Shown piece by piece: positions 4,413 to 64,000 of a DNA stretch of 64,000 bases (position 1 is its first letter; each line of letters starts with the position of its first letter). The notes beneath the pieces were generated by a model. That model did no database searches and was not told the origin of the DNA. It saw only the letters and a list, made by a program, of their open reading frames with translations. The translations under genes and the position numbers were made by a program. Location: positions 1-64,000 of IMG/VR virus record IMGVR_UViG_3300044625_001067; one strand, given 5' to 3'.

Positions 4413-7400
4413 TACTTCAGTCTACGCAACCGACTGTGAAAAAGTCCACCCTTGACCTCTTTGAGGATAAAGCTCAGAAGGAAGACGAGCTTAAATTTGC
4501 ACTCTGCGAAGAGTTTGCATCTGAGATGGAATTGCCTGTAGACTACGTCTACGCTGAGTTTGTGGACCCCAACACCACCTCTTTACAAGAGGTTAAGTCA
4601 GTCCTTGATTCTTTCTAGGCTGCTTCGCAACGCTACCCCAACCAACTTCCCTGCAATGCCTGACACTTTAGACTTTAGTGGAAACCTTGTGACCTTTTTA
4701 GGTCTCATCGGTGTTACATCCACGCTCGTTATCTACGTGGTGGTATCAAGAACTTTCTGGTCTTCACCTTTTCGGCGTTAGCTCTCCGCAGTAACTTCGC
4801 AAAGACACACAACCACTCGGCCATGAGACTCAATTATTTCAACCTTCTAGCCACTCTCTGCATTGGGGCACTCGGCAGCTTAATGTTCCCACACGCCATT
4901 TTCCTGTTTGCCTTTGTTAATGGGTTTTGCGGTAGCACTTTGTACCCCATTGTTGAGTTTGAGTAGCACTAAGGAGCACTGAAGACGCTCGAATGCCTGT
5001 ACAAGGCCCCCACCTAAACACTCCGCACCCTTGTTGCGCCCCAAGCAAAATGGCAAGCTTCACCGACGAACGTTACATGGACCTGGCTACGGAAATTTAC
5101 CTTCACCTTATCCGGGAGAGTGGACCTCATGCACTTCTTGACTTCGAACTGAGGGAACTAGCTAAAAGGGCAGACGATGCTGCAGCTGCTCTGGCGGATC
5201 GATTCCTGGAGGAATGAGCCAACCTTGCATGAAAACATACCAATTTTGGTACGGATCCCCGCACGGTGATGGGTCAGAAGTTCACTATAGATCAAACCAC
5301 CAGCCGGTGTTCGAGTGCTACTGCGAAGGAATTGAAGAAGCAGTGAAGCTATTTGAAGCACAAACACAAAAGTCCTTCATGAGAGGGTACAGCATAAGTG
5401 TTGATTCGGACTTAAGCTTCCCGGAAGTGAACTACTACGATCGCCCGAACTTTGCACCTGTAAAGGGTTTCAGGGGTGTGAGTAGACTACGTTTGAGGTT
5501 AAGCTTTAAGCTATGGTGCGCCTACCGAGAAATTGTACATAGTTGGAGAGCTGGGGCCGGTTTCCCGCCCTTGCTATCTTGAGCAGAAAGCGGTATAGTA
5601 GAGTCAGTTAACCCACCTTTGGCCAACAGCCATGAACACCTCTAAACTGTGTCCCAACGCTCAAGAGCTGTACGACGCCGCAGAATCCACACTTAAGCAA
5701 TTTGGGATCCCCGAGGATACCCTTCGCACAGCGTTGGCCGCTGCCCTACACCGTCTTTCAGACAAGTGGGAGAGGGAAATTGGAATTTTCAATAACAAAC
5801 CAAAAACTGAGTTTATACGTGGGATCACAAACTGTACGACCTCTTTGACAGAGATTGCTGACGACTTAGATGGAAAGTCCTGATAACCATTTATACGGAC
5901 AAACCTGAAGATTACCACATGAAAAACACCACCTCAACCCACTCTGACAACTTGAGTCTTGAAGCTCAGCAAATTATGGACTTCATACAATTACGAGACT
6001 ACCAGAAAAGGCATGCTCAGCTAGTCGTCTCCGCTGCTTTCCAGGCTTTGGCTAACCTAACAAAGAGTGAAGTTTCCCGACTTACCCCTGAGTTACTAGA
6101 GACCCTCTCAAGAGAGTTTCAATGGAAAGCACAACACCTGTAACTACGTTGCATTGATGACCACTCCCAAAATTAAGTATGAGATCACCCCCGAAGACGC
6201 ACGTAGAGTCGCACAAGCTCTTCGTAACGAGGCTCACCAACTCGAAAATGAGAGCGAACGTGCCTGTGAAAAGGGCTTCGACGACTACGGCACCTTGCTC
6301 TGGAAAGAGTGTTCCCTTCACAATAAGCTGGCTGATTACTTCTACCCCTTAGGTTAAACAACTAAAGCCCCTTAACCCTCGAGATTACTATGGAAGTTCC
6401 AGTTTTGTTAGTGATTATCGTGTCCGCCGTTGCCGTTGCAGGTGTGGTGGCAACTTTAGTCCTGTACAATGTTCTTCAAGGTTTGACAAGGAGAAAATGA
6501 CGATTGACCCCTACGGTAACCTTCGTTCTTTACAAGAGGTTAAAGCCGCAACACAAAAGGTAGTGAGTGCGTTTAGCCATCGTCACAACCCTGAAGCTGA
6601 CTCCGGCTTTAGCGCCCTTGCTGAGGCCATCCGTGTTGCAGCCCAGGAAGCTTCACCGGTAGAATACGGCTCACTATACGGTTTTCCTATGGAATACAAA
6701 TGCCATGTACGTGATGCCCTGAACCTAATCGCGTCTGAGCTGGACGCTCTGGCCCTGAAACGCGAATCCTTTCTAAGGCAAGGCTCTGACTGATTACTGT
6801 CGGGTAGTCCCACGCAGCTCTTAAGCGAAATCAGCACACACTTCTCAGGTTAAACACCCCCGTAGCCAAATGTCTGGAAAGTTTTCGTTCAGCAAACTAG
6901 TTTTAGGTTTGACACGCCCCAAGGCGGTAACGTCAGGAGTCGTTGCGTACTACCTTCAACCACTCATACACGGCAACAACACCGCACTGAATATGCTATT
7001 TACAGCATTTTCCGTTCTAGCCTACTTAATTGCCATCCTGATTGTGGTGGTCGGAGATCCTTTTCTGATCCCACCGGGAAGCTGGAGGGTCGCCGAGGTG
7101 TACCGGGAACGTCTCAATAGACGATGGGCTCGCCACCAGGTACTCTTCCTGTCTTACCTTGTTACGCTCGGGCTTATTTTTATATCCGTGCTGGTGTTAA
7201 AAGCTGCTCCCACCCAAAGTATCTGGTTGGAACGAATATACCTGTTCCTTGGCATTCTCGCATTCTCCCATTCGCTGAGTATTCCAAGTGTTTTAATTGC
7301 TGCCCAAAGAGAGCGAATTGATTCTGTTATCGAGTCGAGGAGAAGGCAAGAAGGTATTGCCCCTCGAACCGATCTGGGAGAGGGGGGGACTTGGTTAGGG

Positions 7401-37678: not shown

Positions 37679-37750
37679 GCGAGTGTAGTTCAGCGGTAGA
37701 ACGTTAGCTTCCCAAGCTAAATGTCGCCGGTTCAAGTCCGGTCACTCGCT
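37679..37750 (+). tRNA. tRNA-Gly(CCC)
   Basis: GCGAGTG/CACTCGC acceptor; anticodon loop TTCCCAA; T loop TTCAAGT; no encoded CCA. Confidence 0.95.
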
Positions 37751-38306
37751 CTCTTTCCCGCACAGCAAATATCTTTATGCAACCTTCAAACGAAGACCCC
37801 AGCTCAGTGGAAAAGATTGAAAAGGAAGTTATTGAGTTCTTGAACACAAAGGGAGGACGTGCAAAGCTTCGTGAAGTTCAAACTAGGTTTGAGCAGGAAA
37901 CAGTGAAGTCCATTCAAAACCTCACAGTCGCACCGGGGTCTGTAGTTCTCGACATGATTGCAAACAACAAGCTTTGTCTCAATTCCGATTGGGAAGTTGG
38001 TGTTAGACCCACTATTCCCATAAGCACGGCATCACCCAGGTACGTAACAACTGGGAGTTTTTCCGTGCGCAACGATATAAACTGCCCACGCTGCGATCTT
38101 CAGCATGTCGACCGGGGCGACTGGGCCAAGAGACTGCACAGGAAGCACCTCTGCGAACGGTGCGGCTGCATCTGGCAGCCTGAGGACGGGTATAGCTTCG
38201 GAATCTGACCCTAAGTGTTCAATTCAGTGAGCAGGGCGGTTACCCGCCTTTACCTTTCCGGGAGAAGGCGGTATGATTATAAGGTAACCAGTTTCGGTCC
38301 GGTCTG

Positions 38307-39008
38307 ATGGCTTCTTCCTCAAAAGTTCTTGACCTTGTTCGTTACGTTGGGCAGACCTTGTCGGTTAAACGAAGGAATGGCAGCATCGTCTCCTTAAGAA
38401 TTTCAGCTTCAACTAGTAACCCCCTTTACCCCTTCCAAGACTCCTCCGGAGGATTTTACACCCCTGAAGGGTGCACCTTCTTTGGCCAAAGGTCTCCCGA
38501 CGATATTGTGAAGATTCTCGGTATCAGGAAACCGGGAATGGGTAGGACTGAGCTTAGAGATTTTATTTCCCAGACCGAAGAGTATGCGAGACAACTTAAA
38601 TTGGAATTGTCTCGCCGGGAGTCTTGCCCAACTTTACAGGAAGCCTCAGAAGGTGATGTACTTGAAGATGACTCCATTGTTCTCCTCAAGTGTGCTAACA
38701 ACGCAATACTCGTATCCCCCTCATATACAGAAACCGAAGCCACATGGAGTGATACTTTTCTGGAGCTGAATGATTCCCTAAAGGAGGGTGGATTTAATCC
38801 TTCTGAGTGGTTTGTACCCTCCAAGAGCCTTCTTCACTTGGCTATGGCGACCCATAGAAGGTTTTTTGAAGAATCATGGTATTGGAGTTCCACTGAGTAT
38901 GACGACACCAGGGCAGAGGCTGTGGACTTTAGGGATGACGGAAGCTACGAGCTTCACCCAAAGACCTATAAAGGTTCCGTTCGTGCCTTTCGCTCCGTCT
39001 ACTTTTAA
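38307..39008 (+). CDS. protein with C-terminal DUF1566/C-type-lectin-like end
   Basis: 'WFVPS...WYWSSTE...VRAFR'. Confidence 0.6.
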   Translation: MASSSKVLDLVRYVGQTLSVKRRNGSIVSLRISASTSNPLYPFQDSSGGFYTPEGCTFFGQRSPDDIVKILGIRKPGMGRTELRDFISQTEEYARQLKLELSRRESCPTLQEASEGDVLEDDSIVLLKCANNAILVSPSYTETEATWSDTFLELNDSLKEGGFNPSEWFVPSKSLLHLAMATHRRFFEESWYWSSTEYDDTRAEAVDFRDDGSYELHPKTYKGSVRAFRSVYF

Positions 39009-40527
39009 CCCCCGAAAGCCCTAAACCAATGGTAGACCCTGCACAAACTGACTTGTTTACTGCCCCGGTGACTTCAGACTATCAAGTAAAGACCCGCTGG
39101 GGTTTCATGGGGTTCGAGAATCAGTATTGGGATAAGACAAAAATAGGGGAGATAATCACACTTTCCGGACCGCGAGTTGATGTAGATCACAAGAGAAAGA
39201 ATACGTTTAGTGGGTATATTCTTGACCTAGAGTTTCTTACTTGCGAGGATTATAGCAGGGTTCAAGGGGAGTGGACAGCGCCGAAACACATGGATTGCGC
39301 TATTGCAACTATGTGGACTTTTAAGGGAACCGCCGCTAGACGTAAAATGACGACACTACTTAAAAGTGGGCTTGGCATTGGCGTCTCAATTGAGCATGGC
39401 GGTAGAAAGCCTAAAAGAACCATAGGTCCTTGCATAACAGTCACCCATTGCCCCCAAAACCACGATGCATGGGTTATAACTGGAGCCATCGCAGGAAAGT
39501 TCTACAGCAATTTGTATCCAAAGAACAAAACACTTCCGGACTCAGTTTTGAACTGTGCACGGGAGCAATACGAGAAGCACGCTAAACAAGTGTTTCATAC
39601 ACGTGGGAATAGAGATTTCATTCGTGCCCAGCTAGAGTGGGAACCTGGCGGGTCTTACTACAAGTTGTTAAATCCACCCTGTCGAGGGTGAGGTTAGTCG
39701 GGTACGGTCAACCGCACCCCTGAAGGCGGTTACCCGCCTTGCCTTTTCCAGGAAAGTAAGGCATAATTAACGAGAAACTGAACGATGGCCCTCGAACAAT
39801 GAAGTCCACATTTTACGTGAAGAACGAAAAGGTTGAGAGCACAAAAGCTCTCGTTCGCCAACACGCAACTCTAAGATTTCTACAAAACCCTTTACAGGTG
39901 GGTTCCTCAACCGAATTCTGCTTAGAAGGCGATGTCAAAGACTTTAATTCTCTCAACGTTATGCTGGAGGAGCTAAACGTCGAAGAAAAACCAGAACCAG
40001 GGAGCTTTGTTGAACATTTCTGGTCAGTTGTAAGGGGTTCCCCTCGCAATCGCAACCTGTGATTGCCGCAGAAACGGTTAGCCGGCCCCATCCGTTAGGT
40101 CCTTTTTCGGCCTTTGCAAGTAAACACGTCATTCTACTAGCATGGACATTAAGTCACCCTTGACTGACATAGGCTTGCGTAACTTGGCTCACGCACCCCG
40201 TCCCACTGCGGCAAGGGCTCGAAAGCAGATTAGAGAGATTAAAAAAGGGTCCGGCGTGTCTGTGAACGATTGGACGTTTAGAGGTAACATGAAGTACTCT
40301 ATAAACTGCGGAAGTCTAGAAGACACTTCTACAGCCGTATCTTGGCTGAAAGAGAAGAGTATTGCTGTTCTTGAGTGCCCTAAGATACTTGACGCCACAG
40401 CATAGGGCGACGGATGGATTGCTTATTTGGTTAGACCTATAGCGTGAAGGCGGTTTCCTGGCTTGTTTGCTTGGGGGACTCCCTCTGACAACCCTGCGGC
40501 ACTCAAGTCGAATTCTCCCGCCCAACG

Positions 40528-40572
40528 GGGCGGTTACCCGCCCTTTTGCCCCTCGGCGAAACGGGCTATAGT
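40528..40572 (+). promoter_or_regulatory. composite promoter 1 of RNA island
   Basis: GGGCGGTTACCCGCC...TATAGT; no plausible ORF follows. Confidence 0.8.
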
Positions 40573-40600
40573 AAAGGAGTGGTTGAGAGCTTCGCTCCTC

Positions 40601-40785
40601 GCCCCCCTTGCGAAACGAACCTCGAAAAGATCGCGTCTTTGTAAAAGACCTAAGTAGCATACCCCACGAATGTACCTCGTTAGTCGTGCTTGGCGGGTTA
40701 AGCGTAAATGCTTCCGTAAGCTGGGGAAAGGGCTAGGACAAATTGCTACTACAATGACGCAATCTTCGAGACTTCGCCAAGGGGC
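40601..40785 (+). ncRNA. ~185-nt rod-shaped structured RNA of unknown class
   Basis: Nested pairings GCCCC/GGGGC, CTCG/CGAG, AAGAT/ATCTT, GCGTC/GACGC, AGTAGCA/TGCTACT, CCCCA/TGGGG; lies between two promoters. Confidence 0.65.
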
Positions 40786-40787
40786 AA

Positions 40788-40831
40788 GGCGGGAAACCGC
40801 CCTTTACTCCCCTAGCCAAACAAGCTATAGT
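40788..40831 (+). promoter_or_regulatory. composite promoter 2 of RNA island
   Basis: GGCGGGAAACCGCC box, TTTACT, TATAGT 40826-31. Confidence 0.8.
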
Positions 40832-40911
40832 AAAGGGGTGGTTGAGAGAGCTTCGCTCCTCACTCTTTCCCCGGTCTCTCCGGGGGCAACTTGAAAATTT
40901 AAGATTTACAC

Positions 40912-41006
40912 ACACTGGTGAGTACACAGGTTGGGGTACGACCAAGTGCTACCGTGGTCGGGCTTTTACCCTGGTAAGGGGTGAAAGAGTTGGTAGCAGC
41001 CAGTGT
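40912..41006 (+). ncRNA. pseudoknotted multi-stem RNA of unknown class
   Basis: ACACTGG/CCAGTGT closing stem; three internal hairpins; loop TGCTACCG complementary to TGGTAGCA. Confidence 0.55.
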
Positions 41007-41017
41007 TAAGACCAAAA

Positions 41018-41140
41018 GGTTAACGAGAGAGAAAGATCACGGTTCGAGTCCGGATCCAGCAGTAATTGAGCCCGTCAAGGGCATTCCTAGCCATGGTTGC
41101 GGGGTAGTTTAAGTGGCCTAAAAACATTCTCTCTTTTACC
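41018..41140 (+). ncRNA. circularly permuted tRNA-like element 1
   Basis: Order: GAGAGAG, T arm (TTCGAGT), acceptor closed by a linker, TA-GTTT..AAAC D arm, TTCTCTC. Confidence 0.65.
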
Positions 41141-41219
41141 CAGGGGACAATGGCGGTCGCGGCTAACGCCAAGTGCGACTAAGCCACGTCTCATGACCCC
41201 GGTTGATCCCGGGGTATAC

Positions 41220-41293
41220 GCTGCAGTAGGCGAATTGGTTAAGCCGCCAGACTTTCAATCTGGAAATTACGGGTTCAAACCCCGTCTGCAGTA
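41220..41293 (+). tRNA. tRNA-Glu(TTC)
   Basis: GCTGCAG/CTGCAGT; CCAGA-CTTTCAA-TCTGG; ACGGG-TTCAAAC-CCCGT. Confidence 0.9.
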
Positions 41294-41422
41294 TGACCCT
41301 GTGGTTTAACCCATGGGGCACCCTGTGGTTCAACCCGTAGGGCAAATCCACCTTGCCTCTACAGATCGGGAGATAGCATCAAAACGAGTCATCGTGGAAG
41401 AGGGAAGAACTCGGTGGGTTCC

Positions 41423-41548
41423 TGACTAAGAGTGTTAGAGGTTAGCATGTTCCTTTGGGCGAAAACAGTAAGATAGAACGAAGGCCAAGTTCCGTATCTG
41501 TGAGTAGTTTTGACAGAGGAGGTTGAGGTTCGAATCCTCGTTAGTCAC
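41423..41548 (+). ncRNA. tRNA-like RNA with ~50-nt hairpin insertion in the anticodon arm (Gln-like)
   Basis: TGACTAA/TTAGTCA acceptor, D arm, TGAGG-TTCGAAT-CCTCG T arm; extended anticodon arm. Confidence 0.7.
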
Positions 41549-41695
41549 TTGCCCCTCGGCAACAGGGTGCTTCGTTATGCCCTGACCATCAAACATAACG
41601 CCGCTTCTCGTGACGGTAAGATCGAGACTCTGCATCCCTGAGTAACGGGACGCTTAATGTTTGTCGGACAAACATCCTTGGCAACTCAACAGGTT

Positions 41696-41790
41696 AAGAC
41701 GTTGCGAGTCACAGCTGGTAACTGTGACAGGGGACAAGTCTGGTTGACGTTCTGTGCACAAGAACCACGGGTTCGATTCCCGGCGTCTTC
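41696..41790 (+). ncRNA. tRNA-like RNA with extra arm (Cys GCA-like loop)
   Basis: AAGACGT/GCGTCTT; GTCACAG/CTGTGAC hairpin; GTTCT-GTGCACA-AGAAC; CGGG-TTCGATT-CCCG. Confidence 0.6.
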
Positions 41791-41816
41791 GTTGGTTTGC
41801 TTTCGCAAACCCTTAC

Positions 41817-41865
41817 TTCCGCTCTTCTGAGGCCGAAAGCCACGGGGTTCGAATCCCGGCGGAAA
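41817..41865 (+). ncRNA. miniature tRNA-like element (acceptor + T arm, GAAA hairpin)
   Basis: TTCCGC/GCGGAA; GGC-CGAAA-GCC; GGG-TTCGAAT-CCC. Confidence 0.55.
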
Positions 41866-42097
41866 CTGCTCTAAGGGGCAATCACAGGCAAACGCGAGAG
41901 AAATTATGGACAATAGAGCCCGAGGATTTCTCGGATACTCACCCGGCTCCCCTTCGGGTCCCTTCAAGGGATAATTCCTTAGCCTCATAATGTGAGGGTC
42001 CTTTGGGCAACAGTTTCGATTGATCGTAAACCCTCGTTTGGAAAGTGCGGCGCATAACTAAGTCCGTGCGGAAGACAGCAGTGGGTGACCGTCGAAG

Positions 42098-42177
42098 TTG
42101 AAACGGAGCTGGACGCTCGTACTCGTACAGGATGGCCTCTGTGCGAGCAATGCAGGTTCGATCCCTGCCGTTTTAAT
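42098..42177 (+). ncRNA. D-stemless tRNA-like element with long anticodon-position stem
   Basis: TTGAAACG/CGTTTTAA; GCTCGTAC/GTGCGAGC; GCAGG-TTCGATC-CCTGC. Confidence 0.6.
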
Positions 42178-42244
42178 TGCCCAAGATAAACCCACTGGCT
42201 AACCCTGGTACGGTTAATCGCAAGGCAATCCCTCCGGAGGGGAA

Positions 42245-42309
42245 GGTGCGTGGCTTAGTGGTAAAGCTGGTCCGAAAGGCTGAACGCAGGTTCGATTCCT
42301 GCCGCACCA
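42245..42309 (+). ncRNA. tRNA-like element with GAAA tetraloop replacing the anticodon loop
   Basis: GGTGCG/CGCACC; canonical D arm GCTT-AGTGGTA-AAGC; GCAGG-TTCGATT-CCTGC. Confidence 0.7.
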
Positions 42310-42310
42310 C

Positions 42311-42951
42311 TTGGAGTGAGATTCGAGAGTTAGTCGCCTCGATACCCGCAGGGGTATAGCTTAAAGACTCCCTAACAGAGCGCACTCAACCCCAGTTATC
42401 CCACGGCGCTGGTCGCATAGCCGAAGGCACTTCCTGAAGAAGGAACAACTACCGCTGGCGGACCTGGGGCGGTTTGTTGTAAAACAATTGGTATTCAGTA
42501 GCGTCTCGCGAGCAACGCTGATACAACCAGGTCCTGCGACCCTAAGTTAATGCCTCCACGTGGCAGGGTTGGTAACTTTCCCTTTAGGAAAGGCCAAATT
42601 AACAGGGAATTTCTCATCCCGTACGTGAGAAACCTCGACCAAGGTGAGAAGTCAGTCGCTCAGGACACTCTGGGAAAACCTGCCAAGGGTTAATTTGGAC
42701 GGAACTTTCATCCGTTACGTGAAAGCTCTCCTTTGGATTTCGAAGGAATCCGGGGTACTTTGACAGCGATTTGCTCTAAAACCTTCAACAGGTCTGGCAA
42801 TTCGGTGAGTTTGATTCCCGCTTACTCCATTGGATTTTCTCAAATCCGACACCCCCAGAAAAGTTTACTACCTTTGGTAGTGACTATAATGGATGAGTCA
42901 CTGCTCTGCTTGGGCGAAAGCTAAACGGATAACCGGACCGTTCAGCTCCAA
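42311..42951 (+). ncRNA. large ornate structured RNA (~640 nt) with several pseudoknots
   Basis: Terminal stem TTGGAGTGA/TCAGCTCCAA and many long-range complementarities (see findings); no credible ORF. Confidence 0.7.
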
Positions 42952-43208
42952 GTATCAGGTTTCCCCTGGGTTAGCACCCAGGGGTTTAACCCATTCTAGA
43001 AACTGGGATCGTAAGGAAAACGTCGTTAAGTTCCCGTCACTGCCCTGTAAACAGACGTTAACATGGGGTGCTTTCTTGAGGGCTGTCTTGCCGCTGGTAT
43101 CGCTAGATGAAACACTCTTACCGGCCAGTTTGCGAGCCCTGCTGAAAGCTTAGTCCCCTCTGTGCGGCATTGGTTCGCCAAGGCCACGGGATTAGCCTCC
43201 CGTGCTAC

Positions 43209-43284
43209 CCAGGTATCGCCTAACTTGGCTATGGCACCTCTTTCGGGAAGAGGAATAGTCCCGGTTCAAATCCGGGTGCCTGGA
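43209..43284 (+). tRNA. tRNA-Pro(CGG)
   Basis: CCAGGTA/TGCCTGG; CCTCT-TTCGGGA-AGAGG; CCCGG-TTCAAAT-CCGGG. Confidence 0.9.
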
Positions 43285-43355
43285 TGTCCCACTAACGTGG
43301 GAGCAAGGAAACTTGATAACTAAGTAACTATTCTGTCGCAAATGCGATAGCATTT

Positions 43356-43429
43356 GGGGTCTTAGCTCATTTTGGTAGAGCATCTCTGTGGCACGGAGAA
43401 GGTGACCGGTTCGATCCCGGTAGATTCCA
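43356..43429 (+). tRNA. tRNA-Ala(GGC)
   Basis: GGGGTCT/AGATTCC with G3:U70; loop GTGGCAC. Confidence 0.92.
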
Positions 43430-43457
43430 CTTTGTGGGCAACCACAAACTAGAGCAA

Positions 43458-43531
43458 GGGCTTACATGTACCAAGGCTGGCGAGATTGCTTTGCAAGCAA
43501 ACTGTGAAGAGTTCGATTCTCTTTGGGTCCA
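43458..43531 (+). tRNA. tRNA-Ala(TGC), atypical D arm
   Basis: GGGCTTA/TGGGTCC with G3:U70; loop TTTGCAA; AAGAG-TTCGATT-CTCTT. Confidence 0.75.
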
Positions 43532-43552
43532 CTTTCGCTAACGCGAAAACAC

Positions 43553-43668
43553 GAGGGAGAAATGCCGGTTCAAGTCCGGCTCTGGGGGTCCTATAACGTG
43601 GGGTCCTGGGTAGTTTAACTGGTGCCAAGGACTTGTTATCAGTACGCACAAGTCCAAAAACTTCTTTC
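43553..43668 (+). ncRNA. circularly permuted tRNA-like element 2, with hairpin inserted in the D loop
   Basis: GAGGGAG, GCCGG-TTCAAGT-CCGGC, closed acceptor hairpin, TA-GTTT-AACTGGT..[GGACTTGT/ACAAGTCC]..AAAC, TTCTTTC. Confidence 0.7.
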
Positions 43669-43674
43669 CCACAA

Positions 43675-43747
43675 CCCCTCATAGTGTAGCGGCCAAGCAC
43701 GCACCTCTGTCTAAGGTGTATCACGGGTTCAAATCCCGTTGAGGGGG
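43675..43747 (+). tRNA. tRNA-Asp(GTC)
   Basis: CCCCTCA/TGAGGGG; CACCT-CTGTCTA-AGGTG; G73. Confidence 0.92.
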
Positions 43748-43783
43748 TTATTCCGAGGGGTGGCCACCCCAATGACGAATAAA

Positions 43784-43843
43784 GCCAGAGTCCCTGGATA
43801 GGGAAGAGTCGCGACAACGGGGTTCGAATCCCCAGCTCTGGTG
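43784..43843 (+). ncRNA. tRNA-like element lacking an anticodon arm
   Basis: GCCAGAG/CTCTGGT; CCCT-GGAT-AGGG; stub GTCGCGAC; GGGG-TTCGAAT-CCCC. Confidence 0.6.
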
Positions 43844-43860
43844 TTGACGCCCTGGATTGA

Positions 43861-43925
43861 GCGGTTAACCGTTTGCTCCGGGACGGTTTCCCGCCCTTTC
43901 ACCTTTCTGCGAAACGGGTTATAGT
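43861..43925 (+). promoter_or_regulatory. composite promoter 3 of RNA island
   Basis: GCGGTTAACCG and ACGGTTTCCCG boxes, TATAGT 43920-25. Confidence 0.8.
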
Positions 43926-44070
43926 AAAAGGGTGGTTACGGGAGTTTCACTCTCGGCCCCGAACGCTGCGGTTAGGTCTCTGCGTTAGTGAGACTGGCAG
44001 GAGCCCGCCTCCCAGGGCGATGCTTAAGAGCTAGACCCCTTTCTCTGGTTCCCGGAGAAAGATTCCCCGA

Positions 44071-44120
44071 TCCAACTGGTGGTTTGCCTCCGGCAAAGCA
44101 GGTTCGAGTCCTGCCTTGGA
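44071..44120 (+). ncRNA. miniature tRNA-like element
   Basis: TCCAA/TTGGA; CTGGTGG D-loop remnant; TTTGCC/GGCAAA; GCAGG-TTCGAGT-CCTGC. Confidence 0.5.
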
Positions 44121-44213
44121 AATTGGTGCGAAGATCCCTAAGTCTTTATGCCATCTCGTCTCAGAATCCAGCTGTTTGCTTAGGGGCGAACGATCTCTGG
44201 TGAAAAGAGCGAG

Positions 44214-44287
44214 TCTCTCATCGACTAATTGGTAATGTCACCGCCGGGTTACTGGTGGGAATCCAGGTTCGAACCCTGGTGAGAGTG
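44214..44287 (+). tRNA. tRNA-Asn(GTT)-like with 8-nt anticodon loop lacking U33
   Basis: CTCTCA/TGAGAG; CCGCC-GGGTTACT-GGTGG; CCAGG-TTCGAAC-CCTGG; G73. Confidence 0.7.
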
Positions 44288-44316
44288 TTTGCTCTAGTGT
44301 GCTAGAGTGATTAAAA

Positions 44317-44390
44317 GCCCGAGTAACCCAGCGGAAGAGGTGCCTGACTTAAAATCAGGAAGTCGTAGGGTTCGAATCCCACCTCGGGTA
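44317..44390 (+). tRNA. tRNA-Leu(TAA), short variable loop
   Basis: GCCCGAG/CTCGGGT; CCTGA-CTTAAAA-TCAGG; A73. Confidence 0.88.
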
Positions 44391-44441
44391 TTGCTCCTTT
44401 GACCTGGGCCTGGAAGCTCAGTGAATAAGGAACAAACAATC

Positions 44442-44516
44442 GCGTATGTACCCCAACCGGAAGAGGGGCAACACTGAGACTGTTGTTATGTGGAGGTTCG
44501 ACCCCTCTCATGCGCA
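44442..44516 (+). tRNA. tRNA-Leu(GAG), short variable loop
   Basis: GCGTATG/CATGCGC; CAACA-CTGAGAC-TGTTG. Confidence 0.85.
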
Positions 44517-44589
44517 TTTTCCTTTTACCACCCTTCACATAGTGGCGGTAGCTTGGAAAGAACCCTGCGGTTGAAAACCATGGGCAAAA

Positions 44590-44660
44590 TCTCGAATCGA
44601 CTAGTGGTAGGTCGCCTGTCTCTGAAACAGGAAACTTTGGTTCGAATCCAAATTTGAGAA
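44590..44660 (+). tRNA. tRNA-Gln(CTG)
   Basis: TCTCGAA/TTTGAGA; CCTGT-CTCTGAA-ACAGG. Confidence 0.9.
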
Positions 44661-44715
44661 TAACGTTTGGGGCACATCTATGTGCCCTTGCGTACGTTTC
44701 TCGTAGAGAAACCTT

Positions 44716-44804
44716 GGAAGAGTGGTCGAGTGGCTGATGACGATTGCTTGGAAAGCAATTGAGGCGCAAAAGCGTCTCCGGAGGTTCGAATCCTCTCTCT
44801 TCCG
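44716..44804 (+). tRNA. tRNA-Ser(GGA)
   Basis: GGAAGAG/CTCTTCC; loop TTGGAAA; long variable arm; G73. Confidence 0.95.
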
Positions 44805-44862
44805 TCTCACCTGAAAGTAGTACAGCAATAGGGTAAATTATAGGAGTCAATACGTATTTACC

Positions 44863-59853: not shown

Positions 59854-59965
59854 TGGGACCGGCAGGACTCGAACCTGCAACCGCGCCTTTAAAAGAGGTA
59901 ATTTAATTGCTGATGTATCTTTGTCAAGATAACTTTTCGTGCTCTACCAGTTGAGCTACGGTCCC
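59854..59965 (-). tRNA. tRNA-Lys(TTT) with 39-nt insertion in the anticodon stem
   Basis: GGGACCG/CGGTCCC; CG[39 nt]CCT-CTTTTAA-AGGCG; GCAGG-TTCGAGT-CCTGC. Confidence 0.8.
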
Positions 59966-60696
59966 GTATTTGATCCGAAAACTACCTGGAGCGATATTGA
60001 AAGTTTTTTCTCAGCCCCCTGAGCTACTCTCCAATGTTAATGGGTTCAAAGGTTAAGTTAAACCACTCCCCGTCAGAGTTACAGAACAAGAGCTTAGAGT
60101 CGCTATCGTCGGGGTAATACCAGATCAGCATGTTCTTTAACGATTTGTTTTGGGAGTTTTTGGGCAGGGTCTCACCTCGCTTCAGTCGATACAATACGTC
60201 ATGCCCTATCCCTTTACTCGGCACGTCTAACCGTATGCCCTTGTCACCGTCAAAACCTGCTTCAGTGGGTGTCATATCTTTTTGTTAGGTCTACGTTCGC
60301 TTGGCAAATTACTTGGATCGATAATAAAGGTGTTTAGCCCCCAAGTTCTAGAGCCTATATGAGTCCACACAAACATTCAGCATCAACACTTTTCTTTTGG
60401 GCAGGTTTTCACCGGGAAAAGAGTAAGGATGTAACTTCACACCCGTTTGATTTTCAGGGTTAGCATAGAAACAATTGTCATAGTAGTAGCTCGGAAGATC
60501 ATACTCGTCTTCGGGGTCGAGAACTGCTACAATGTCTTCCTTAATGCGAACTCTCCCTTCTACCTTAGTGAGGGGTATGTGATCGGGAGGTAAAGATAAG
60601 AGTACACCAACAACAACTTCCATGTTATCCGGGAAGTCGCTCAGTCTTTCCTTCAGGTCTTTTACTTTCATTCTGTTTACAAAGTCTGAGTTTAAC

Positions 60697-60746
60697 TAGA
60701 TAGTTGTTTTTCCCAAGAGAGTTAGGGTAAATCGCTGAACTATCTA
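60697..60746 (-). ncRNA. hairpin with TCAGC/AAAAACA internal-loop motif
   Basis: TAGATAGT-TCAGCGA...AAAAACA-ACTATCTA. Confidence 0.65.
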
Positions 60747-60764
60747 TGTTTGCCGAAGGCAAAG

Positions 60765-60886
60765 TCGAAGAGGCAAGATTCGAACTTGCGTATGGCGGTT
60801 CCTTTTGCGTATTGGGTAATTGCTGAATTACCTAAGCTAGGTAATCTTTTTGCATTACCACTGCCTAACCACTTGGCTACTCTTCG
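60765..60886 (-). ncRNA. tRNA scaffold whose anticodon loop is replaced by an AAAAAG-hairpin-TCAGCAATT module
   Basis: CGAAGAG/CTCTTCG; GCC-AAGTGGTTA-GGC; GTGGT/ACCGC; GCAAG-TTCGAAT-CTTGC. Confidence 0.8.
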
Positions 60887-61759: not shown

Positions 61760-62137
61760 TCACTTGGTTGACCTTGCATACAAATTCGACAGTAGCAGAA
61801 GCAGAATGAGTGACAAAATGGACACAGAGCCTAAGATTACGATTGGGCTAAACACTGAGAGCCATGGCCAGGTTATTTGCCCCGTTAATTTCAACCCGAG
61901 GAGGAGACCCTGGGCTGTCATTAACGAAACTGCGAGATTCTCAAACATTAGTTATTTCTCATGCGAAAGTAGTTGAAGAATCATCCAAAGGGCTCCCAAC
62001 CCAAGTAGAAAAATTGGCACAAGGGTTGGTGAAAGCACTGTGAGCCAGGGCCAGGAAACCTGACCCGTTACTTTCATAGTCATGAATACGGTTTGCAGAA
62101 CGATGCAGAGGGCACCCGGCAATTTGATCCAGATCAT
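61760..62137 (-). CDS. two tandem paralogous small membrane proteins (61952-62137 and 61760-61948)
   Basis: 'KVTGQVSWPWLTVLSP' vs 'KLTGQITWPWLSVFSP'; first overlaps the DUF2828 stop. Confidence 0.7.
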
Positions 62138-63612
62138 GCTCCTTCAGCAAATACGGCACCGACAGCGTCGTACCTTTCAGTGTAAACAGCGTCACGCATA
62201 GCCCCTACAGGCGTAATTACCCCGCCAGTAAGCACAGCTTTCAGGATTGAAGGGCTGCACCCGGAGACCAGGCAAGTTCCCGTGTCGTGCATTTTCATAG
62301 GTACGTTGCCGCTAGAGTTAACATTCCAGAAGACAAGTTCCGGCAAGGAATACCCAGCTTGAGCGTACTTGATTCGCACCGCCTCAAAGTTTGTCACTGA
62401 GTTGTTTCTGCAGCAGGAATCAAACTGCATGTCTGAGACAATGATGAGCTTGCGCGGCATTTCCCCCTCAGGAATATGGTTCATCGTGGCGGTAGCCAAC
62501 ACAAGATTGAAGACTGCTTGCAGGTCTGTATTCGCACCCCAGTCGGCCCGGCTAAGGTTACGAACACGCTCAGCAACGTTTCTCCCTGTAACCGACTGCA
62601 ACTGCGGTCTTCCGGAGAAGGTTAGGAACTTATCCTTCCATGCCCCGGTGTTACGCTCAGCGATGTACATCGCCAGCGAGATTGAAACCGCCATGGGCAT
62701 GCCGCCGTTATTTCCCATTGATCCTGAGACGTCGGCAATTACCAGGCCGTTCAGCTGCTCTCCTTCCATGTAGTTGGGTAGAGCCTCCCACATTAAGTTT
62801 AGAGTCTGATCGCTCCTCTCACCCCCGTAAAGGTACTTGTGCACGATCTCGTAAGGGTAGATCGTACCGGCATTGATTTTTGCCTCACCTTTCTCTACCG
62901 AGTCAAGGTAGGATTGGTAGCGGTCGCCGTCGCGCTTGGCGAAAGCTTTACGATACATGAAGCCTGCCCGAGAAGGCAACTTGCTATAGTCAATGCTTTC
63001 CCACTCACGGGCACACATTGGCTGCTCAACAATCTTGACTTGTGACCTGAGGGCAGTCAGTGCCTTGCGGTACTGCCTCTCGGTCCAACCCATTGCTTCG
63101 GCAATTTTTCGGCCAATCCTCTTAGAGTCCTGGCTGGAAGCGTTAATGGAAGGCAGCCACTTTGCCAGAAGTGAAACTGACTTTCCAACTTCCGTATTTA
63201 GGTCGGCGTTCAGTTGTGCCTTAATTGCTTCGAGTGCGATGCCCCAAACTAAGGTACCGTCAAGGGCTACCACATCATCCCAGCGACCGTACTGTGGAAT
63301 CAGGCTAACTAGCCTGGCACCAATTGCAGCATCATTTCGAACCAGCTCCTTGAAAACTTCTCGAAAGATCTTTCGCTCTCCCTGGCCCCCACGAATGTCG
63401 CGTGCCCAAAACAAGATTCGAGTTGCGGTCTCAGGGTCTTCTGCGTAGGCAAGGTTGAACAGTCGAGTTGCTTCGCTGATTTTGTCACGGCAAGCTGCAA
63501 TCTTTCCAAAAAGGTCCAGGCACTTAGACTCGGTGGACTTGTATGCCTTTGCACCGTTTGCAGTGGTAGTTTGGTTAAACTCGTTTTCGAGTGCGTTTAA
63601 AAAGGTTGTCAT
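62134..63612 (-). CDS. DUF2828 family protein (TROVE/Ro60-like helical domain + vWA)
   Basis: 'TANGA...ST..CLDLF', 'RDIRGGQGER', 'YGRWDD', 'AKWLPS', MIDAS 'DVSGSM', 'SDMQFD', 'VFWNV', 'VSGCSP'. Confidence 0.88.
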   Translation of the reverse strand: MTTFLNALENEFNQTTTANGAKAYKSTESKCLDLFGKIAACRDKISEATRLFNLAYAEDPETATRILFWARDIRGGQGERKIFREVFKELVRNDAAIGARLVSLIPQYGRWDDVVALDGTLVWGIALEAIKAQLNADLNTEVGKSVSLLAKWLPSINASSQDSKRIGRKIAEAMGWTERQYRKALTALRSQVKIVEQPMCAREWESIDYSKLPSRAGFMYRKAFAKRDGDRYQSYLDSVEKGEAKINAGTIYPYEIVHKYLYGGERSDQTLNLMWEALPNYMEGEQLNGLVIADVSGSMGNNGGMPMAVSISLAMYIAERNTGAWKDKFLTFSGRPQLQSVTGRNVAERVRNLSRADWGANTDLQAVFNLVLATATMNHIPEGEMPRKLIIVSDMQFDSCCRNNSVTNFEAVRIKYAQAGYSLPELVFWNVNSSGNVPMKMHDTGTCLVSGCSPSILKAVLTGGVITPVGAMRDAVYTERYDAVGAVFAEGA

Positions 63613-63618
63613 TTTCTC

Positions 63619-63662
63619 AAGTTGATTGTTTGTTAAGATACAAATTAAAGCTGTATCAACTT
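63619..63662 (-). promoter_or_regulatory. 5' leader hairpin of the DUF2828 gene with ACAGC/AAACA motif
   Basis: AAGTTGAT-ACAGC...AACAAACA-ATCAACTT ending 6 nt before the ATG. Confidence 0.65.
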
Positions 63663-64000
63663 TGCGCTATGGGTAAGGACTCGATGGTCGAATGGTGGAG
63701 GAAATCCTCAAGGGTTTCTGAGCCATCGACACCCAAGCATAGTTAAAACCTAATGCAGTAAATCCTGGGAACTACCAGGAGGCCCGGTACACGAACCTCC
63801 AGCTATAGTCCTCCTCAGGAATCGCGGGGTGGTTGAGGACTTTCTCCAGGACTTTGACTGTGTGTTCAAGGTCGGCGTAGTAATTCTCACCGTAGTCTGT
63901 CGAGCCGAAGAAGAATCCCCCTTCGGTGGGTAGGATCTCCGCAGGGTTTACTGTGTTTGTTTCCGCAGGGGTGTCCCTACTTTCGAGGAGTTTTTTGCAC

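What the first reader, a model, noticed from the sequence alone, without database searches (positions are those of the whole stretch)
63613..63665. Two competing folds in the DUF2828 translation-initiation region
Seen: the long stem AAGTTGAT/ATCAACTT displays the CAGC motif and abuts the ribosome-binding region. An alternative hairpin GATACA/TGTATC uses the same 5' strand and would free the region before the ATG. Inference: a protein-dependent translational switch.
Basis: inference. Interest (0 to 1): 0.6.

Follow-up and report, generated by a model that had tools for sequence, protein, structure and literature searches.

The report
Ro-like phage gene's conserved RNA hairpin
The small hairpin just before this phage gene's start codon is one copy of a widespread, apparently uncatalogued RNA element that accompanies phage Ro60-like genes and tRNA clusters, and is probably the RNA this protein binds rather than a two-fold RNA switch.

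Summary
Alone they are not better than chance (z -0.78). Comparison shows the long stem is real. Its arms, CAGC and the trailing G are invariant in 15 relatives down to 63% protein identity. It belongs to a strand-specific hairpin family found upstream of DUF2828 genes in 71 of 87 loci. The family has a covarying closing stem with an invariant AG/CU base and 3' G, CAGCAA after the 5' arm, an anticodon-arm-like inner hairpin and an A-rich linker. Folding energies give no two-state switch, and the spacer before AUG is unpaired in every fold. The protein models as a Ro60 fold. The hairpin predicts a nearby DUF2828 gene (12/22 against 1/58 control loci). The same module, circularly permuted, interrupts anticodon stems of phage tRNA genes, two of them in this window. 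Best reading: a Y-RNA-like ligand of the Ro60-like protein; this copy abuts the ribosome-binding site and probably allows autogenous repression. Binding and regulation are inferred, not shown. No Rfam family or paper matched.

The parts
63618..63663 (-). Whole CAGC hairpin, the gene-proximal copy: one flanking A, the 8-bp closing stem, the interior, and the invariant 3' G
   Evidence: Covariance-model hit of 32.6 bits, E 3e-4 with R1. With the leave-clade-out model R2 it scores 18.8 bits, E 0.06, second-best hit in the window on either strand. Invariant in 15 orthologous leaders.
63655..63662 (-). 5' arm of the closing stem, AAGUUGAU
   Evidence: In sister lineages GUUGAU/AUCAAC becomes GUUAAU/AUUAAC, a compensatory change.
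63619..63626 (-). 3' arm of the closing stem, AUCAACUU
63650..63653 (-). CAGC motif, one base after the 5' arm. It is followed here by UUU instead of the family's usual AA(U).
   Evidence: CAGC is invariant in all 81 aligned family members.
63637..63657 (-). It overlaps the closing stem by GAU.
   Evidence: Family-wide, inner hairpins have 7-nt loops in 32 of 81 copies (8.2 expected) and an anticodon-loop-like U33/R37 pattern in 19 (0.9 expected).
63627..63636 (-). A/C-rich single-stranded 3' linker (UUAACAAACA) between the inner hairpin and the 3' arm
   Evidence: An A-rich 3' linker is a consensus feature of the family alignment.
63613..63618 (-). Spacer GAGAAA holding the weak Shine-Dalgarno-like GAG. 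Its first G is the family's invariant 3' G.
   Evidence: In the B3-like clade the same position reads GGAG directly after the stem.
62134..63612 (-). DUF2828/DUF7788 gene (492 aa), a Ro60-like protein with a vWA MIDAS motif (D294-x-S296-x-S298)
   Evidence: Pfam and PHROG hits; invariant DxSxS; AlphaFold model pLDDT 91.6; the top 12 PDB fold matches are all Ro60/TROVE proteins.
60696..60747 (-). Second stand-alone copy of the same hairpin family (9-bp stem), between an intron-bearing tRNA and a small ORF
   Evidence: R1 39.2 bits, E 1.5e-5. R2, trained without any window sequence, gives 33.5 bits, E 2.7e-5.
59854..59965 (-). tRNA gene interrupted in the 5' strand of the anticodon stem by a 39-nt insert (59937-59899). 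The insert carries the same module in permuted order: AUCUUG-loop-AAGAU, then CAGCAAU.
   Evidence: Rfam tRNA 48.5 bits with a 52-nt insertion; ARAGORN intron call. Deleting the insert restores a canonical Lys-UUU anticodon arm (local script only). Module scan.
60765..60886 (-). Second interrupted tRNA gene (long-arm type) carrying the permuted module (hairpin 60846-60826, then CAGCAAU)
   Evidence: Rfam tRNA 41.9 bits with a 57-nt insertion.

Best explanation
SHOWN: window 63663-63618 (minus strand) is the gene-proximal copy of a strand-specific family of RNA hairpins, called here the CAGC hairpin. The family has a 7-10 bp closing stem whose sequence covaries between lineages but keeps an invariant A-G/C-U base and a 3' G. 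CAGC(AA) follows 0-3 nt after the 5' arm. Inside are a small hairpin that often looks like an anticodon arm and an A-rich 3' linker. The family accompanies phage genes for a Ro60-fold protein (DUF2828/DUF7788) and phage tRNA arrays. The same module also occurs, circularly permuted, as an insert in anticodon stems of phage tRNA genes. INFERRED: the module is the RNA ligand of the Ro60-like protein, a functional analogue of Y RNAs. In this cyanophage clade one copy is fixed directly against the Shine-Dalgarno region of the protein's own gene. Binding of the roughly 55-kDa ring protein there would block 30S loading and give autogenous repression once the other sites (tRNA-array hairpins and tRNA inserts) are occupied. 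The RNA's two helices are parts of one nested architecture and not a two-state switch.
For: Conservation: the arms, CAGC and the trailing G are invariant in 15 leaders down to 63% protein identity, while the flanks and the loop length vary. Family: 71 of 87 DUF2828 loci have 1-3 copies within 300 nt upstream. Structure: the 9 terminal pairs are 91.9% paired against 33-39% when slid, 6 pairs change on both sides, and U-G wobbles fit only the sense strand. Unbiased test: the 5' seed occurs 282 times on the gene strand against 18 on the other, and 62% have a perfect 7/7 complement downstream against 1% in controls. Membership: a model trained without the window's copies or their orthologues ranks this hairpin second in the window, 18.8 bits, E 0.06. 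Link to the gene: in B3 (245 kb) all 5 hits lie within about 2 kb of the gene, and in Tsamsa all 3 lie within 2.7 kb. 21 of 33 loci with no tRNA nearby still have a copy within 100 nt upstream of the start. Five phages lacking the gene have no copy. Reverse test: 12 of 22 pattern-found hairpin loci hold DUF2828 on the same strand, against 1 of 58 chance matches, p 1e-7. Protein: Ro60 fold with MIDAS. Precedent: Thermus phage phiLo Ro60 binds two Y-like RNAs encoded directly upstream of its gene (PMC12135203). Position: in the window and B3-like clades the stem ends 6-12 nt before the AUG, with the SD starting at the invariant G.
Against: The copies also sit before tRNAs (47 of 199, median 6 nt) and other ORFs, so the position before DUF2828 could reflect a general leader role and not autoregulation. 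Three of this genome's 5 copies lie 70 kb from the gene. In Bacillus-phage relatives the nearest copy is about 90-100 nt upstream with a possible promoter in between, so the operator arrangement is clade-specific. The window copy departs from the consensus (CAGCUUU instead of CAGCAAU; U-A at the fourth pair), and its leave-clade-out E-value is only 0.06. KVP40 and a Felix O1-like phage carry the gene but gave no model hit.
Confidence: 0.45

Rival explanations
1. The hairpin is a Y-RNA-like partner or scaffold RNA of the Ro60-like protein, but it does not regulate translation. It lies upstream of the gene only because partner RNAs are co-transcribed with Ro genes, as for YrlA/YrlB and phiLo Yrl1/Yrl2.
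For: Y-like RNAs sit directly upstream of Ro60 genes in bacteria and phages. Many relatives carry 2-3 tandem copies upstream. In Bacillus-phage relatives the copy is about 90-100 nt from the start. No fold sequesters the SD or AUG.
Against: In more than 30 cyanophage loci the 3' arm is fixed 6-12 nt from the AUG with the SD starting at the invariant G. That is tighter than co-transcription alone requires. A structure bound by a 55-kDa protein at -7 to -50 lies within the ribosome's footprint on mRNA (established knowledge).
Confidence: 0.25
2. The element is a general processing or stability signal of phage tRNA-array transcripts, read by some other factor (a host RNase or another phage protein). 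It would mark cleavage sites before tRNAs and the inserts inside tRNAs. DUF2828 is linked only because it is part of the same tRNA-maturation gene neighbourhood.
For: 47 of 199 copies end a median of 6 nt before a tRNA 5' end, and 40 begin about 5 nt after a tRNA 3' end. The same module lies inside 38 ARAGORN intron-tRNA calls. Three of this genome's 5 copies are in a 24-tRNA array far from the gene. In Tsamsa a copy starts at about +1 of a sigma-A-type promoter, which looks like a 5'-terminal stabiliser.
Against: 21 of 33 loci without any nearby tRNA still have the hairpin directly before DUF2828, often as the only copy in the locus. The window's plus-strand tRNA cluster (37.6-44.8 kb) has no copy. 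tRNA-bearing phages without the gene (T4, T5, S-PM2, phiKZ, Bxz1) have none. A motif kept across phages of cyanobacteria, Firmicutes and Actinobacteria points to a phage-encoded reader, and DUF2828 is the one conserved neighbour found.
Confidence: 0.2
3. One reading: two mutually exclusive RNA folds form a switch, and a protein selects between them to open or close the translation-initiation region.
For: The two helices share GAU, so the full 8-bp outer stem and the full 7-bp inner stem cannot coexist in the window's copy. The folds are close in energy, which is what a switch needs.
Against: The overlap is peculiar to the window's close clade; in other members the inner hairpin is nested. Changes in L011 and B3 break inner pairs without compensation. 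The spacer and AUG are unpaired in all folds, and P(unpaired) barely differs. A truncated 5-bp outer stem plus the inner hairpin can coexist.
Confidence: 0.07
4. It is a DNA-level element: an operator for a dimeric DNA-binding protein, a promoter embedded in a stem-loop, or a recombination site.
For: The arms are a perfect inverted repeat. A Felix O1-like relative has promoters embedded in stem-loops near its DUF2828 gene.
Against: The distance between the arms varies from 18 to over 100 nt, which does not suit a dimer operator. No sigma-70-like hexamers are present, and the spacing to any -10-like hexamer is not constant. There is a strong strand bias (282 against 18) and U-G wobbles that would be C-A on the other strand. 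The same module occurs inside tRNA genes.
Confidence: 0.03

Closest known systems
Yrl1/Yrl2 of Thermus phage phiLo with its Ro60 (PMC12135203)
   Same: A phage-encoded Ro60-fold protein has one or more small structured RNAs encoded directly upstream on the same strand. Each RNA has a 5'-3' closing stem around a large interior and a short conserved single-stranded motif next to the stem. phiLo Ro60 is among the top fold matches of the window's protein (9kop and 9l5y).
   Different: The protein here is a different sequence family: Pfam DUF2828/DUF7788 with no TROVE hit and no sequence-level PDB match. The RNA motif is CAGCAA, not CGAA. The RNA is shorter (about 45-65 nt). Copies are dispersed in tRNA arrays and inside tRNA genes. 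One copy abuts the gene's ribosome-binding site. Binding is untested.
Bacterial Y RNAs YrlA/YrlB with Rsr (PMC4201824)
   Same: They are encoded next to the Ro gene and have a conserved 5'-strand motif near the closing stem. They mimic tRNA: here the inner hairpin resembles an anticodon arm, and a subclass carries a T-arm-like GGUUCGAUUCC hairpin.
   Different: YrlA is defined by GNCGAAN0-1G and by near-invariant T and D arms. The window's copy has neither, and no Rfam Y RNA model matches. The part of tRNA that is mimicked differs: anticodon arm here, T/D elbow in YrlA.
Autogenous translational operators that mimic the protein's normal RNA ligand (E. coli thrS operator, ribosomal-protein operators, phage MS2 coat-protein operator); recalled from established knowledge
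   Same: A hairpin resembling the protein's natural RNA substrate sits just 5' of the SD of the protein's own mRNA, so bound protein competes with the 30S subunit. The window copy departs from the consensus as lower-affinity operator copies often do (inference).
   Different: No binding or repression data exist. Similar hairpins also precede tRNAs and other ORFs, so the operator role is one reading of the position.
Archaeal tRNA introns at non-canonical positions (bulge-helix-bulge substrates) and permuted or split tRNA genes; recalled from established knowledge
   Same: These are short (about 40-50 nt) protein-dependent-looking inserts at non-canonical places in the anticodon stem. The permuted topology of one module recalls permuted tRNA genes.
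   Different: The setting is a bacteriophage. I did not identify a bulge-helix-bulge motif. No RtcB ligase is encoded in this genome. Splicing is not shown.

Membership tests
CAGC hairpin family (defined here) | Closing stem of at least 7 bp with a W-A-G ... C-U-W base followed by G | tested here: met
   AAGUUGAU/AUCAACUU followed by G. A-G/C-U and the 3' G are invariant in 81 of 81 members.
CAGC hairpin family (defined here) | CAGC 0-3 nt after the 5' arm, usually continued as CAGCAA(U) | tested here: inconclusive
   CAGC is present one base after the arm, but it continues as CAGCUUU, and the model aligns a deletion at AAU. Orthologous copies in the B3-like clade read CAGCAAU or CAGCAUA.
CAGC hairpin family (defined here) | Inner hairpin with a roughly 7-nt anticodon-like loop, then an A-rich 3' linker | tested here: met
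   GAUACAG / CUUUAAU / UUGUAUC, then UUAACAAACA.
CAGC hairpin family (defined here) | Detected by a covariance model trained without it or its orthologues | tested here: inconclusive
   R2 gives 18.8 bits, E 0.06 over 128 kb of search space. It is rank 2, aligned end to end, and the next hit scores 11.8 bits. It is significant only if the search space is limited to the gene's leader.
CAGC hairpin family (defined here) | Same strand as, and close to, a DUF2828/DUF7788 gene or a phage tRNA array | tested here: met
   It lies 6 nt upstream of the DUF2828 ATG on the same strand. Family-wide association is shown.
Y RNA / YrlA (Rfam; Chen et al. 2014) | Encoded adjacent to a Ro60 orthologue | tested here: met
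   It is adjacent to a gene whose product models as a Ro60 fold. That gene is not a Pfam TROVE member.
Y RNA / YrlA (Rfam; Chen et al. 2014) | Conserved 5'-strand motif GNCGAAN0-1G (GGUCCGA in animals; CGAA in phiLo) | tested here: not met
   The motif here is (A)CAGC(AA), and no CGAA occurs in the element.
Y RNA / YrlA (Rfam; Chen et al. 2014) | tRNA-like T and D arms; a match to the Rfam models | tested here: not met
   No Rfam hit at E up to 10 in the leader, and none in the relatives. T-arm-like hairpins occur only in a subclass of other copies.
Y RNA / YrlA (Rfam; Chen et al. 2014) | Bound by the Ro protein | not testable with these tools
   This needs EMSA or RIP. The complex-prediction tool handles proteins only.
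Ro60/TROVE proteins (for the downstream gene) | Helical-repeat TROVE-type domain plus a C-terminal vWA domain with a MIDAS motif | tested here: met
   Model pLDDT 91.6. The 12 best PDB matches are all Ro60/TROVE proteins, aligned over the full length, TM 0.50-0.59. DxSxS is invariant in 55 sequences.
Ro60/TROVE proteins (for the downstream gene) | Sequence-level membership (Pfam TROVE; phmmer to solved Ro60 structures) | tested here: not met
   Pfam gives DUF2828 and DUF7788 only. phmmer against PDB finds no Ro60.
Two-state RNA switch (riboswitch-like) | Two mutually exclusive helices, both conserved, one of which sequesters the SD or AUG | tested here: not met
   Exclusivity is not conserved, inner pairs break without compensation, and the SD and AUG are unpaired in all folds.
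Autogenous translational operator | Structured protein-binding site within the 30S footprint at a conserved distance from the SD | tested here: met
   The stem ends 6-12 nt before the AUG in all window-clade and B3-like loci, and the SD starts at the invariant G.
Autogenous translational operator | The gene's own product binds the site and represses translation | not testable with these tools
   This needs binding assays, toeprinting or reporter assays.
Intrinsic terminator or promoter-in-stem-loop cassette | G+C-rich stem with a U tract, or -35/-10 hexamers at fixed spacing | tested here: not met
   No promoter-like or minus-strand terminator-like site in 63400-64000. The stem is A/U-rich and lacks a U tract.

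The most novel reading that the evidence does not exclude
Many tailed phages carry a Ro60-like ribonucleoprotein system in which one RNA module (a WAGAU/AUCUW helix, a G, and CAGCAAU) marks three kinds of target: short introns at a non-canonical site in the anticodon stem of phage tRNA genes, spacers in tRNA arrays, and the protein's own mRNA leader. That would mean protein-guided tRNA splicing or processing in bacteriophages, a kind of tRNA intron not described for bacterial viruses, with the window's hairpin as the feedback operator of the system.
Probability: 0.3. Interest if true: 0.9.

Novelty: new variant of a known kind. Interest (0 to 1): 0.72.

Why it matters
DUF2828 proteins are encoded by at least 702 phage records in the collection searched, including Listeria, Staphylococcus, Bacillus, Vibrio, Salmonella and mycobacterial phages used in research and therapy, and their function is unknown. 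Two results make that function directly testable. The protein has a Ro60 fold, and it travels with a specific, easily synthesised 45-65 nt RNA hairpin, so binding assays, RIP-seq and knockouts in culturable relatives such as Synechococcus phage B3 or Bacillus phage Tsamsa are feasible. The work extends the Ro60/Y RNA partnership to a second, much larger phage protein family with its own RNA code. It ties that family to phage tRNA arrays, whose biology (codon supply or escape from host anticodon nucleases) is under active debate. It also points to dozens of phage tRNA genes, some currently annotated as pseudogenes or missed, that carry a stereotyped insert and may need an unknown splicing activity.

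Tried and rejected
1. Genome-wide repeat or phage promoter: the arm and motif strings occur once in the window, and a covariance model finds only 5 copies in the 277-kb genome. 2. Sigma-70 promoter or intrinsic terminator at the site: none found, and the spacing to any -10-like hexamer varies from 8 to 15 nt among relatives. 3. Known RNA family: Rfam 15 gave only tRNAs (plus one permuted tmRNA in L025) at gathering or permissive thresholds. 4. Literature: searches on DUF2828, phage tRNA introns, phage Ro60/Y RNA and intervening sequences found no description of this motif. 5. Thermodynamic switch: rejected. 6. Phage-encoded RtcB ligase as a splicing partner: absent from this genome. Other ligase and endonuclease families were not searched. 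7. A second Ro-like paralogue near the distant tRNA array: none. 9. The script-based hairpin scan has a background of about 12 hits per 64 kb on both strands, so most of its weak window hits were discarded and only hits confirmed by the covariance model are reported. 10. KVP40 and a Felix O1-like phage gave no model hit. By eye KVP40 has ACAGCAAU in its leader, but I did not test its conservation.

Full report
WHAT IS AT THE COORDINATES. The DUF2828 gene is on the minus strand (ORF 62134-63612, 492 aa; Pfam DUF7788 3.6e-50 and DUF2828 2.5e-37; PHROG 850 'RNA-binding protein'). Its leader is therefore 63613 upward, read on the minus strand. On the mRNA the order is AAGUUGAU (63662-63655), A, CAGC (63653-63650), a U/A-rich stretch, UGUAUC, the linker UUAACAAACA, AUCAACUU (63626-63619), GAGAAA and AUG (63612). 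The inner one is really GAUACAG / CUUUAAU / UUGUAUC and overlaps the outer 5' arm by GAU. Taken alone the fold is unremarkable (z = -0.78).

THE LONG STEM IS UNDER STRONG SELECTION. The window comes from a 277,244-bp virus record, about 98% complete, with about 55 tRNA genes. Its nearest published relatives are the jumbo cyanophages Synechococcus phage B3 and B23 (63% protein identity). I fetched 15 orthologous loci (63-99% identity) and aligned their leaders. The two arms, CAGC, UGUA and the G after the 3' arm are invariant. The sequence just upstream is unalignable, and the interior varies in length. The strings occur once in the window, so this is not a phage-wide promoter or repeat.

IT IS ONE MEMBER OF A LARGE HAIRPIN FAMILY. 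Eighty more DUF2828 loci at 40-97% identity show the same architecture with different stem sequences. The base of the stem is W-A-G and it closes C-U-W followed by G. (A)CAGCAA(U) sits 0-3 nt after the 5' arm. Then come a small inner hairpin and an A-rich linker. Within the cyanophage clade GUUGAU/AUCAAC becomes GUUAAU/AUUAAC, a compensatory change at an orthologous site. In an 81-sequence alignment the 9 terminal pairs are 91.9% paired, against 33-39% with the partner slid. Six pairs change on both sides and the W:W pair splits 41 A-U to 40 U-A. My scan had required pairing, so I ran an unbiased test seeded only on the 5' side. The seed occurs 282 times on the gene strand and 18 times on the other (p 4e-62). 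A perfect 7/7 complement follows within 125 nt for 62% of gene-strand seeds, against about 1% in reversed, shuffled or upstream controls. U-G wobbles, including 41 of 81 at the outermost pair, fit only the sense strand, which argues for RNA. A covariance model trained without the window's copies or any orthologue of the gene-proximal copy still finds the window's second copy (60747-60696; 33.5 bits, E 2.7e-5). It ranks the finding second in the whole window (18.8 bits, E 0.06; the next hit is 11.8 bits).

THE 'ALTERNATIVE HAIRPIN' IS THE FAMILY'S INNER HAIRPIN. Inner hairpins have 7-nt loops in 32 of 81 members (8.2 expected from shuffles). Nineteen have the U33/R37 pattern of an anticodon loop (0.9 +/- 1.0 expected). 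The window's CUUUAAU loop fits this pattern. In other members the inner hairpin lies downstream of CAGCAAU and nests inside the closing stem; only in the window's close clade is it compressed onto the stem. Single changes in L011 and B3 break inner pairs without compensation. On energy, the outer stem alone is worth about -5 kcal/mol. In the window P(outer) is 0.33. The fold with the outer stem enforced (-10.4), the fold with the 3' arm free (-10.2) and a third fold that pairs the 5' arm with CAGCUUU (-11.4, the MFE) are all close. Among relatives P(outer) ranges from about 0 to 0.95. The spacer and AUG are unpaired in all folds. I therefore reject a thermodynamic two-state switch.

LINK TO THE Ro-LIKE GENE. 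The protein models confidently (pLDDT 91.6, pTM 0.91). Its 12 best PDB matches are all Ro60/TROVE proteins aligned over the full length, including Thermus phage phiLo Ro60 (TM 0.50-0.59). D294-x-S296-x-S298 (MIDAS) is invariant in 55 homologues. Sequence methods do not place it in TROVE. Genome-wide model searches give 5 hits in B3 (245 kb), all within about 2 kb of the gene (chance about 1e-7). They give 3 hits in Bacillus phage Tsamsa, all within 2.7 kb upstream of the gene, and one weak hit in Mycobacterium phage Aegeus, 41 nt downstream of the gene. KVP40 and a Felix O1-like phage gave none. T4, T5, S-PM2, phiKZ and Bxz1 have neither the hairpin nor DUF7788 (positive control for the family search). 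In 33 loci with no tRNA in the fetched flank, 21 still have a hairpin within 100 nt upstream of the start, often as the only copy in the locus. For the reverse test I scanned the viral collection with a 5'-arm-plus-CAGCAA pattern. Of 22 loci where the complementary arm follows, 12 hold DUF2828 on the same strand and 16 hold tRNAs. Of 58 loci without the arm (chance matches), 1 holds DUF2828 and 3 hold tRNAs (p 1.2e-7 and 2e-9).

LINK TO tRNA ARRAYS AND tRNA INSERTS. Of 199 stand-alone copies, 47 end a median of 6 nt before a tRNA 5' end. Forty-one end within 60 nt of the DUF2828 start, 44 are followed by another copy, and 40 begin about 5 nt after a tRNA 3' end. In this genome three copies lie in a 24-tRNA array at 132-139 kb, and there is only one Ro-like gene. 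Many tRNA genes in these phages are 110-125 nt long. They carry an insert of the form A-rich, N-AUCUWG, a 2-4 nt loop, WAGAU-N, then CAGCAAU. That is the same helix, the same G and the same motif in circularly permuted order. Forty-five of 48 such modules are on the gene strand and 38 lie inside ARAGORN intron-tRNA calls. For four genes, deleting a 38-49 nt insert from the 5' strand of the anticodon stem restores a canonical arm. These are window 59965-59854 (Lys-UUU), B3's annotated pseudo-tRNA (Arg-UCG), L031 (Asn-GUU) and L025 (CAU). That joining was done only as base-pair counting in a local script. Whether the inserts are spliced is unknown, and no RtcB is encoded.

MECHANISM. Shown: an RNA-level, strand-specific, covarying hairpin family that is associated in both directions with a Ro60-fold gene and with tRNA arrays, and one copy fixed 6-12 nt before that gene's AUG in the window and B3-like clades. 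Inferred: the module is the protein's RNA ligand, as Y RNAs are for Ro60. The closest precedent is phage phiLo, where two Y-like RNAs directly upstream of the Ro60 gene bind the protein (PMC12135203). Bacterial YrlA RNAs likewise lie next to rsr and mimic tRNA (PMC4201824). Further inferred: the copy at the ribosome-binding site lets the protein repress its own translation by occlusion. This follows the logic of operators that mimic a protein's normal RNA ligand (the thrS, ribosomal-protein and MS2 coat operators; from established knowledge). The window copy's departures from consensus would suit a weaker competitor site, but that is speculation. The rivals are a partner RNA without a regulatory role, a general processing or stability signal read by another factor, the literal two-fold switch, and a DNA element. 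They are weighed in their own sections.

COMPARISON AND NOVELTY. The element works like a Y RNA but fails the membership tests for Y RNA/YrlA. The motif is CAGCAA and not GNCGAA/CGAA, there are no T/D arms in this copy, and no Rfam model matches. The protein works like Ro60 but belongs to a separate sequence family. No Rfam family and no paper found in five relevant searches describes the hairpin or the inserts. I rate it a new variant of a known kind (a Ro60-type protein with an adjacent tRNA-mimicking RNA). The tRNA-insert aspect may be more novel still.

LIMITS. All evidence is computational. E-values from the short-calibrated models are rough. The loci were mostly chosen through DUF2828; only searches test the association independently.

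Noticed in passing
window 59854-59965 (-) and 60765-60886 (-); also L031 3089-3208, L023 3190-3309, L011 4692-5437, L025 3113-3411, L001 (B3) 4866-4975: tRNA genes of 110-125 nt carry a stereotyped 38-55 nt insert in the 5' strand of the anticodon stem. The insert holds the same helix, G and CAGCAAU module in permuted order. ARAGORN's default run misses both window genes, and B3's copy is annotated as a pseudo-tRNA. They may be a new kind of phage tRNA intron.
   Followed up: partly
L011 4833-4915, L023 3101-3184, L025 3023-3106, L033 3023-3098, L031 3499-3551, L028 3652-3734: A subclass of stand-alone hairpins (stem AAGAUGAG/CUCAUCUU, GCAGCAAC) encloses a T-arm-like hairpin (GGUUCGAUUCC) flanked by two other small hairpins. 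The order recalls the V, T and AS arms of YrlA. They usually sit just before a tRNA gene.
   Followed up: partly
G000 133554-133607, 134343-134396, 137541-137591 (-) (locus L099): Three near-identical hairpin copies lie in a 24-tRNA array 70 kb from the Ro-like gene. Each is preceded by a small hairpin of the type UUUUGC-GAA-UGCAAAA placed right after a tRNA 3' end.
   Followed up: partly
window 63680-63745 (-): A much stronger hairpin (core UCGAUGG/CCAUCGA) fills the upstream half of the same intergenic region. The 186-nt region folds at -40.4 kcal/mol, z -2.0. It is present only in the closest relatives (90-99% identity) and is replaced by unrelated sequence in L007/L008 and beyond. It has no U tract.
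   Followed up: partly
window 37679-44806 (+): A plus-strand cluster of about 10 tRNA genes has no CAGC hairpin and no insert-bearing tRNA, unlike the minus-strand tRNAs near the Ro-like gene. So the element is not a universal feature of this phage's tRNA genes.
   Followed up: partly
L101 (Vibrio phage KVP40) 2420-2510: The KVP40 DUF2828 leader has a sigma-70-type promoter (TTTACA / TATAAT) wrapped around a T-arm-like hairpin. It then has ACAGCAAU 25 nt before the ATG, inside a GACAUU...AAUGUC stem whose 3' arm contains the start codon. The covariance model did not detect it.
   Followed up: no
L102 (Bacillus phage Tsamsa) 1915-2010: A textbook TTGACA-17-TATAAT promoter lies about 9 nt before a CAGC hairpin, so that copy would form the 5' end of a primary transcript.
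   Followed up: no
L103 (Mycobacterium phage Aegeus) 3984-4127: The weak model hit just downstream of the Ro-like gene overlaps an annotated 47-aa hypothetical CDS (gp61). Two further CAGC-containing hairpin-like stretches follow. The small CDS may be a mis-annotated RNA element.
   Followed up: no
window 61760-61948 (-) and 61952-62137 (-): Two adjacent small ORFs (62 and 61 aa) immediately downstream of the Ro-like gene are paralogues with hydrophobic sequences, and both match phrog_1374 (unknown function).
   Followed up: no
L025 4127-4283 (+): Rfam match to permuted tmRNA (49.7 bits; gathering score 47) in a cyanophage contig, about 1.2 kb downstream of its DUF2828 gene.
   Followed up: no
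L104 (Felix O1-like phage Ro111lw), around its DUF2828 gene: Promoter-like TTGACA...-10 pairs are embedded in perfect 7-9 bp stem-loops before the DUF2828 gene and before tRNAs, without any CAGC motif. This is a different solution at the equivalent positions.
   Followed up: no
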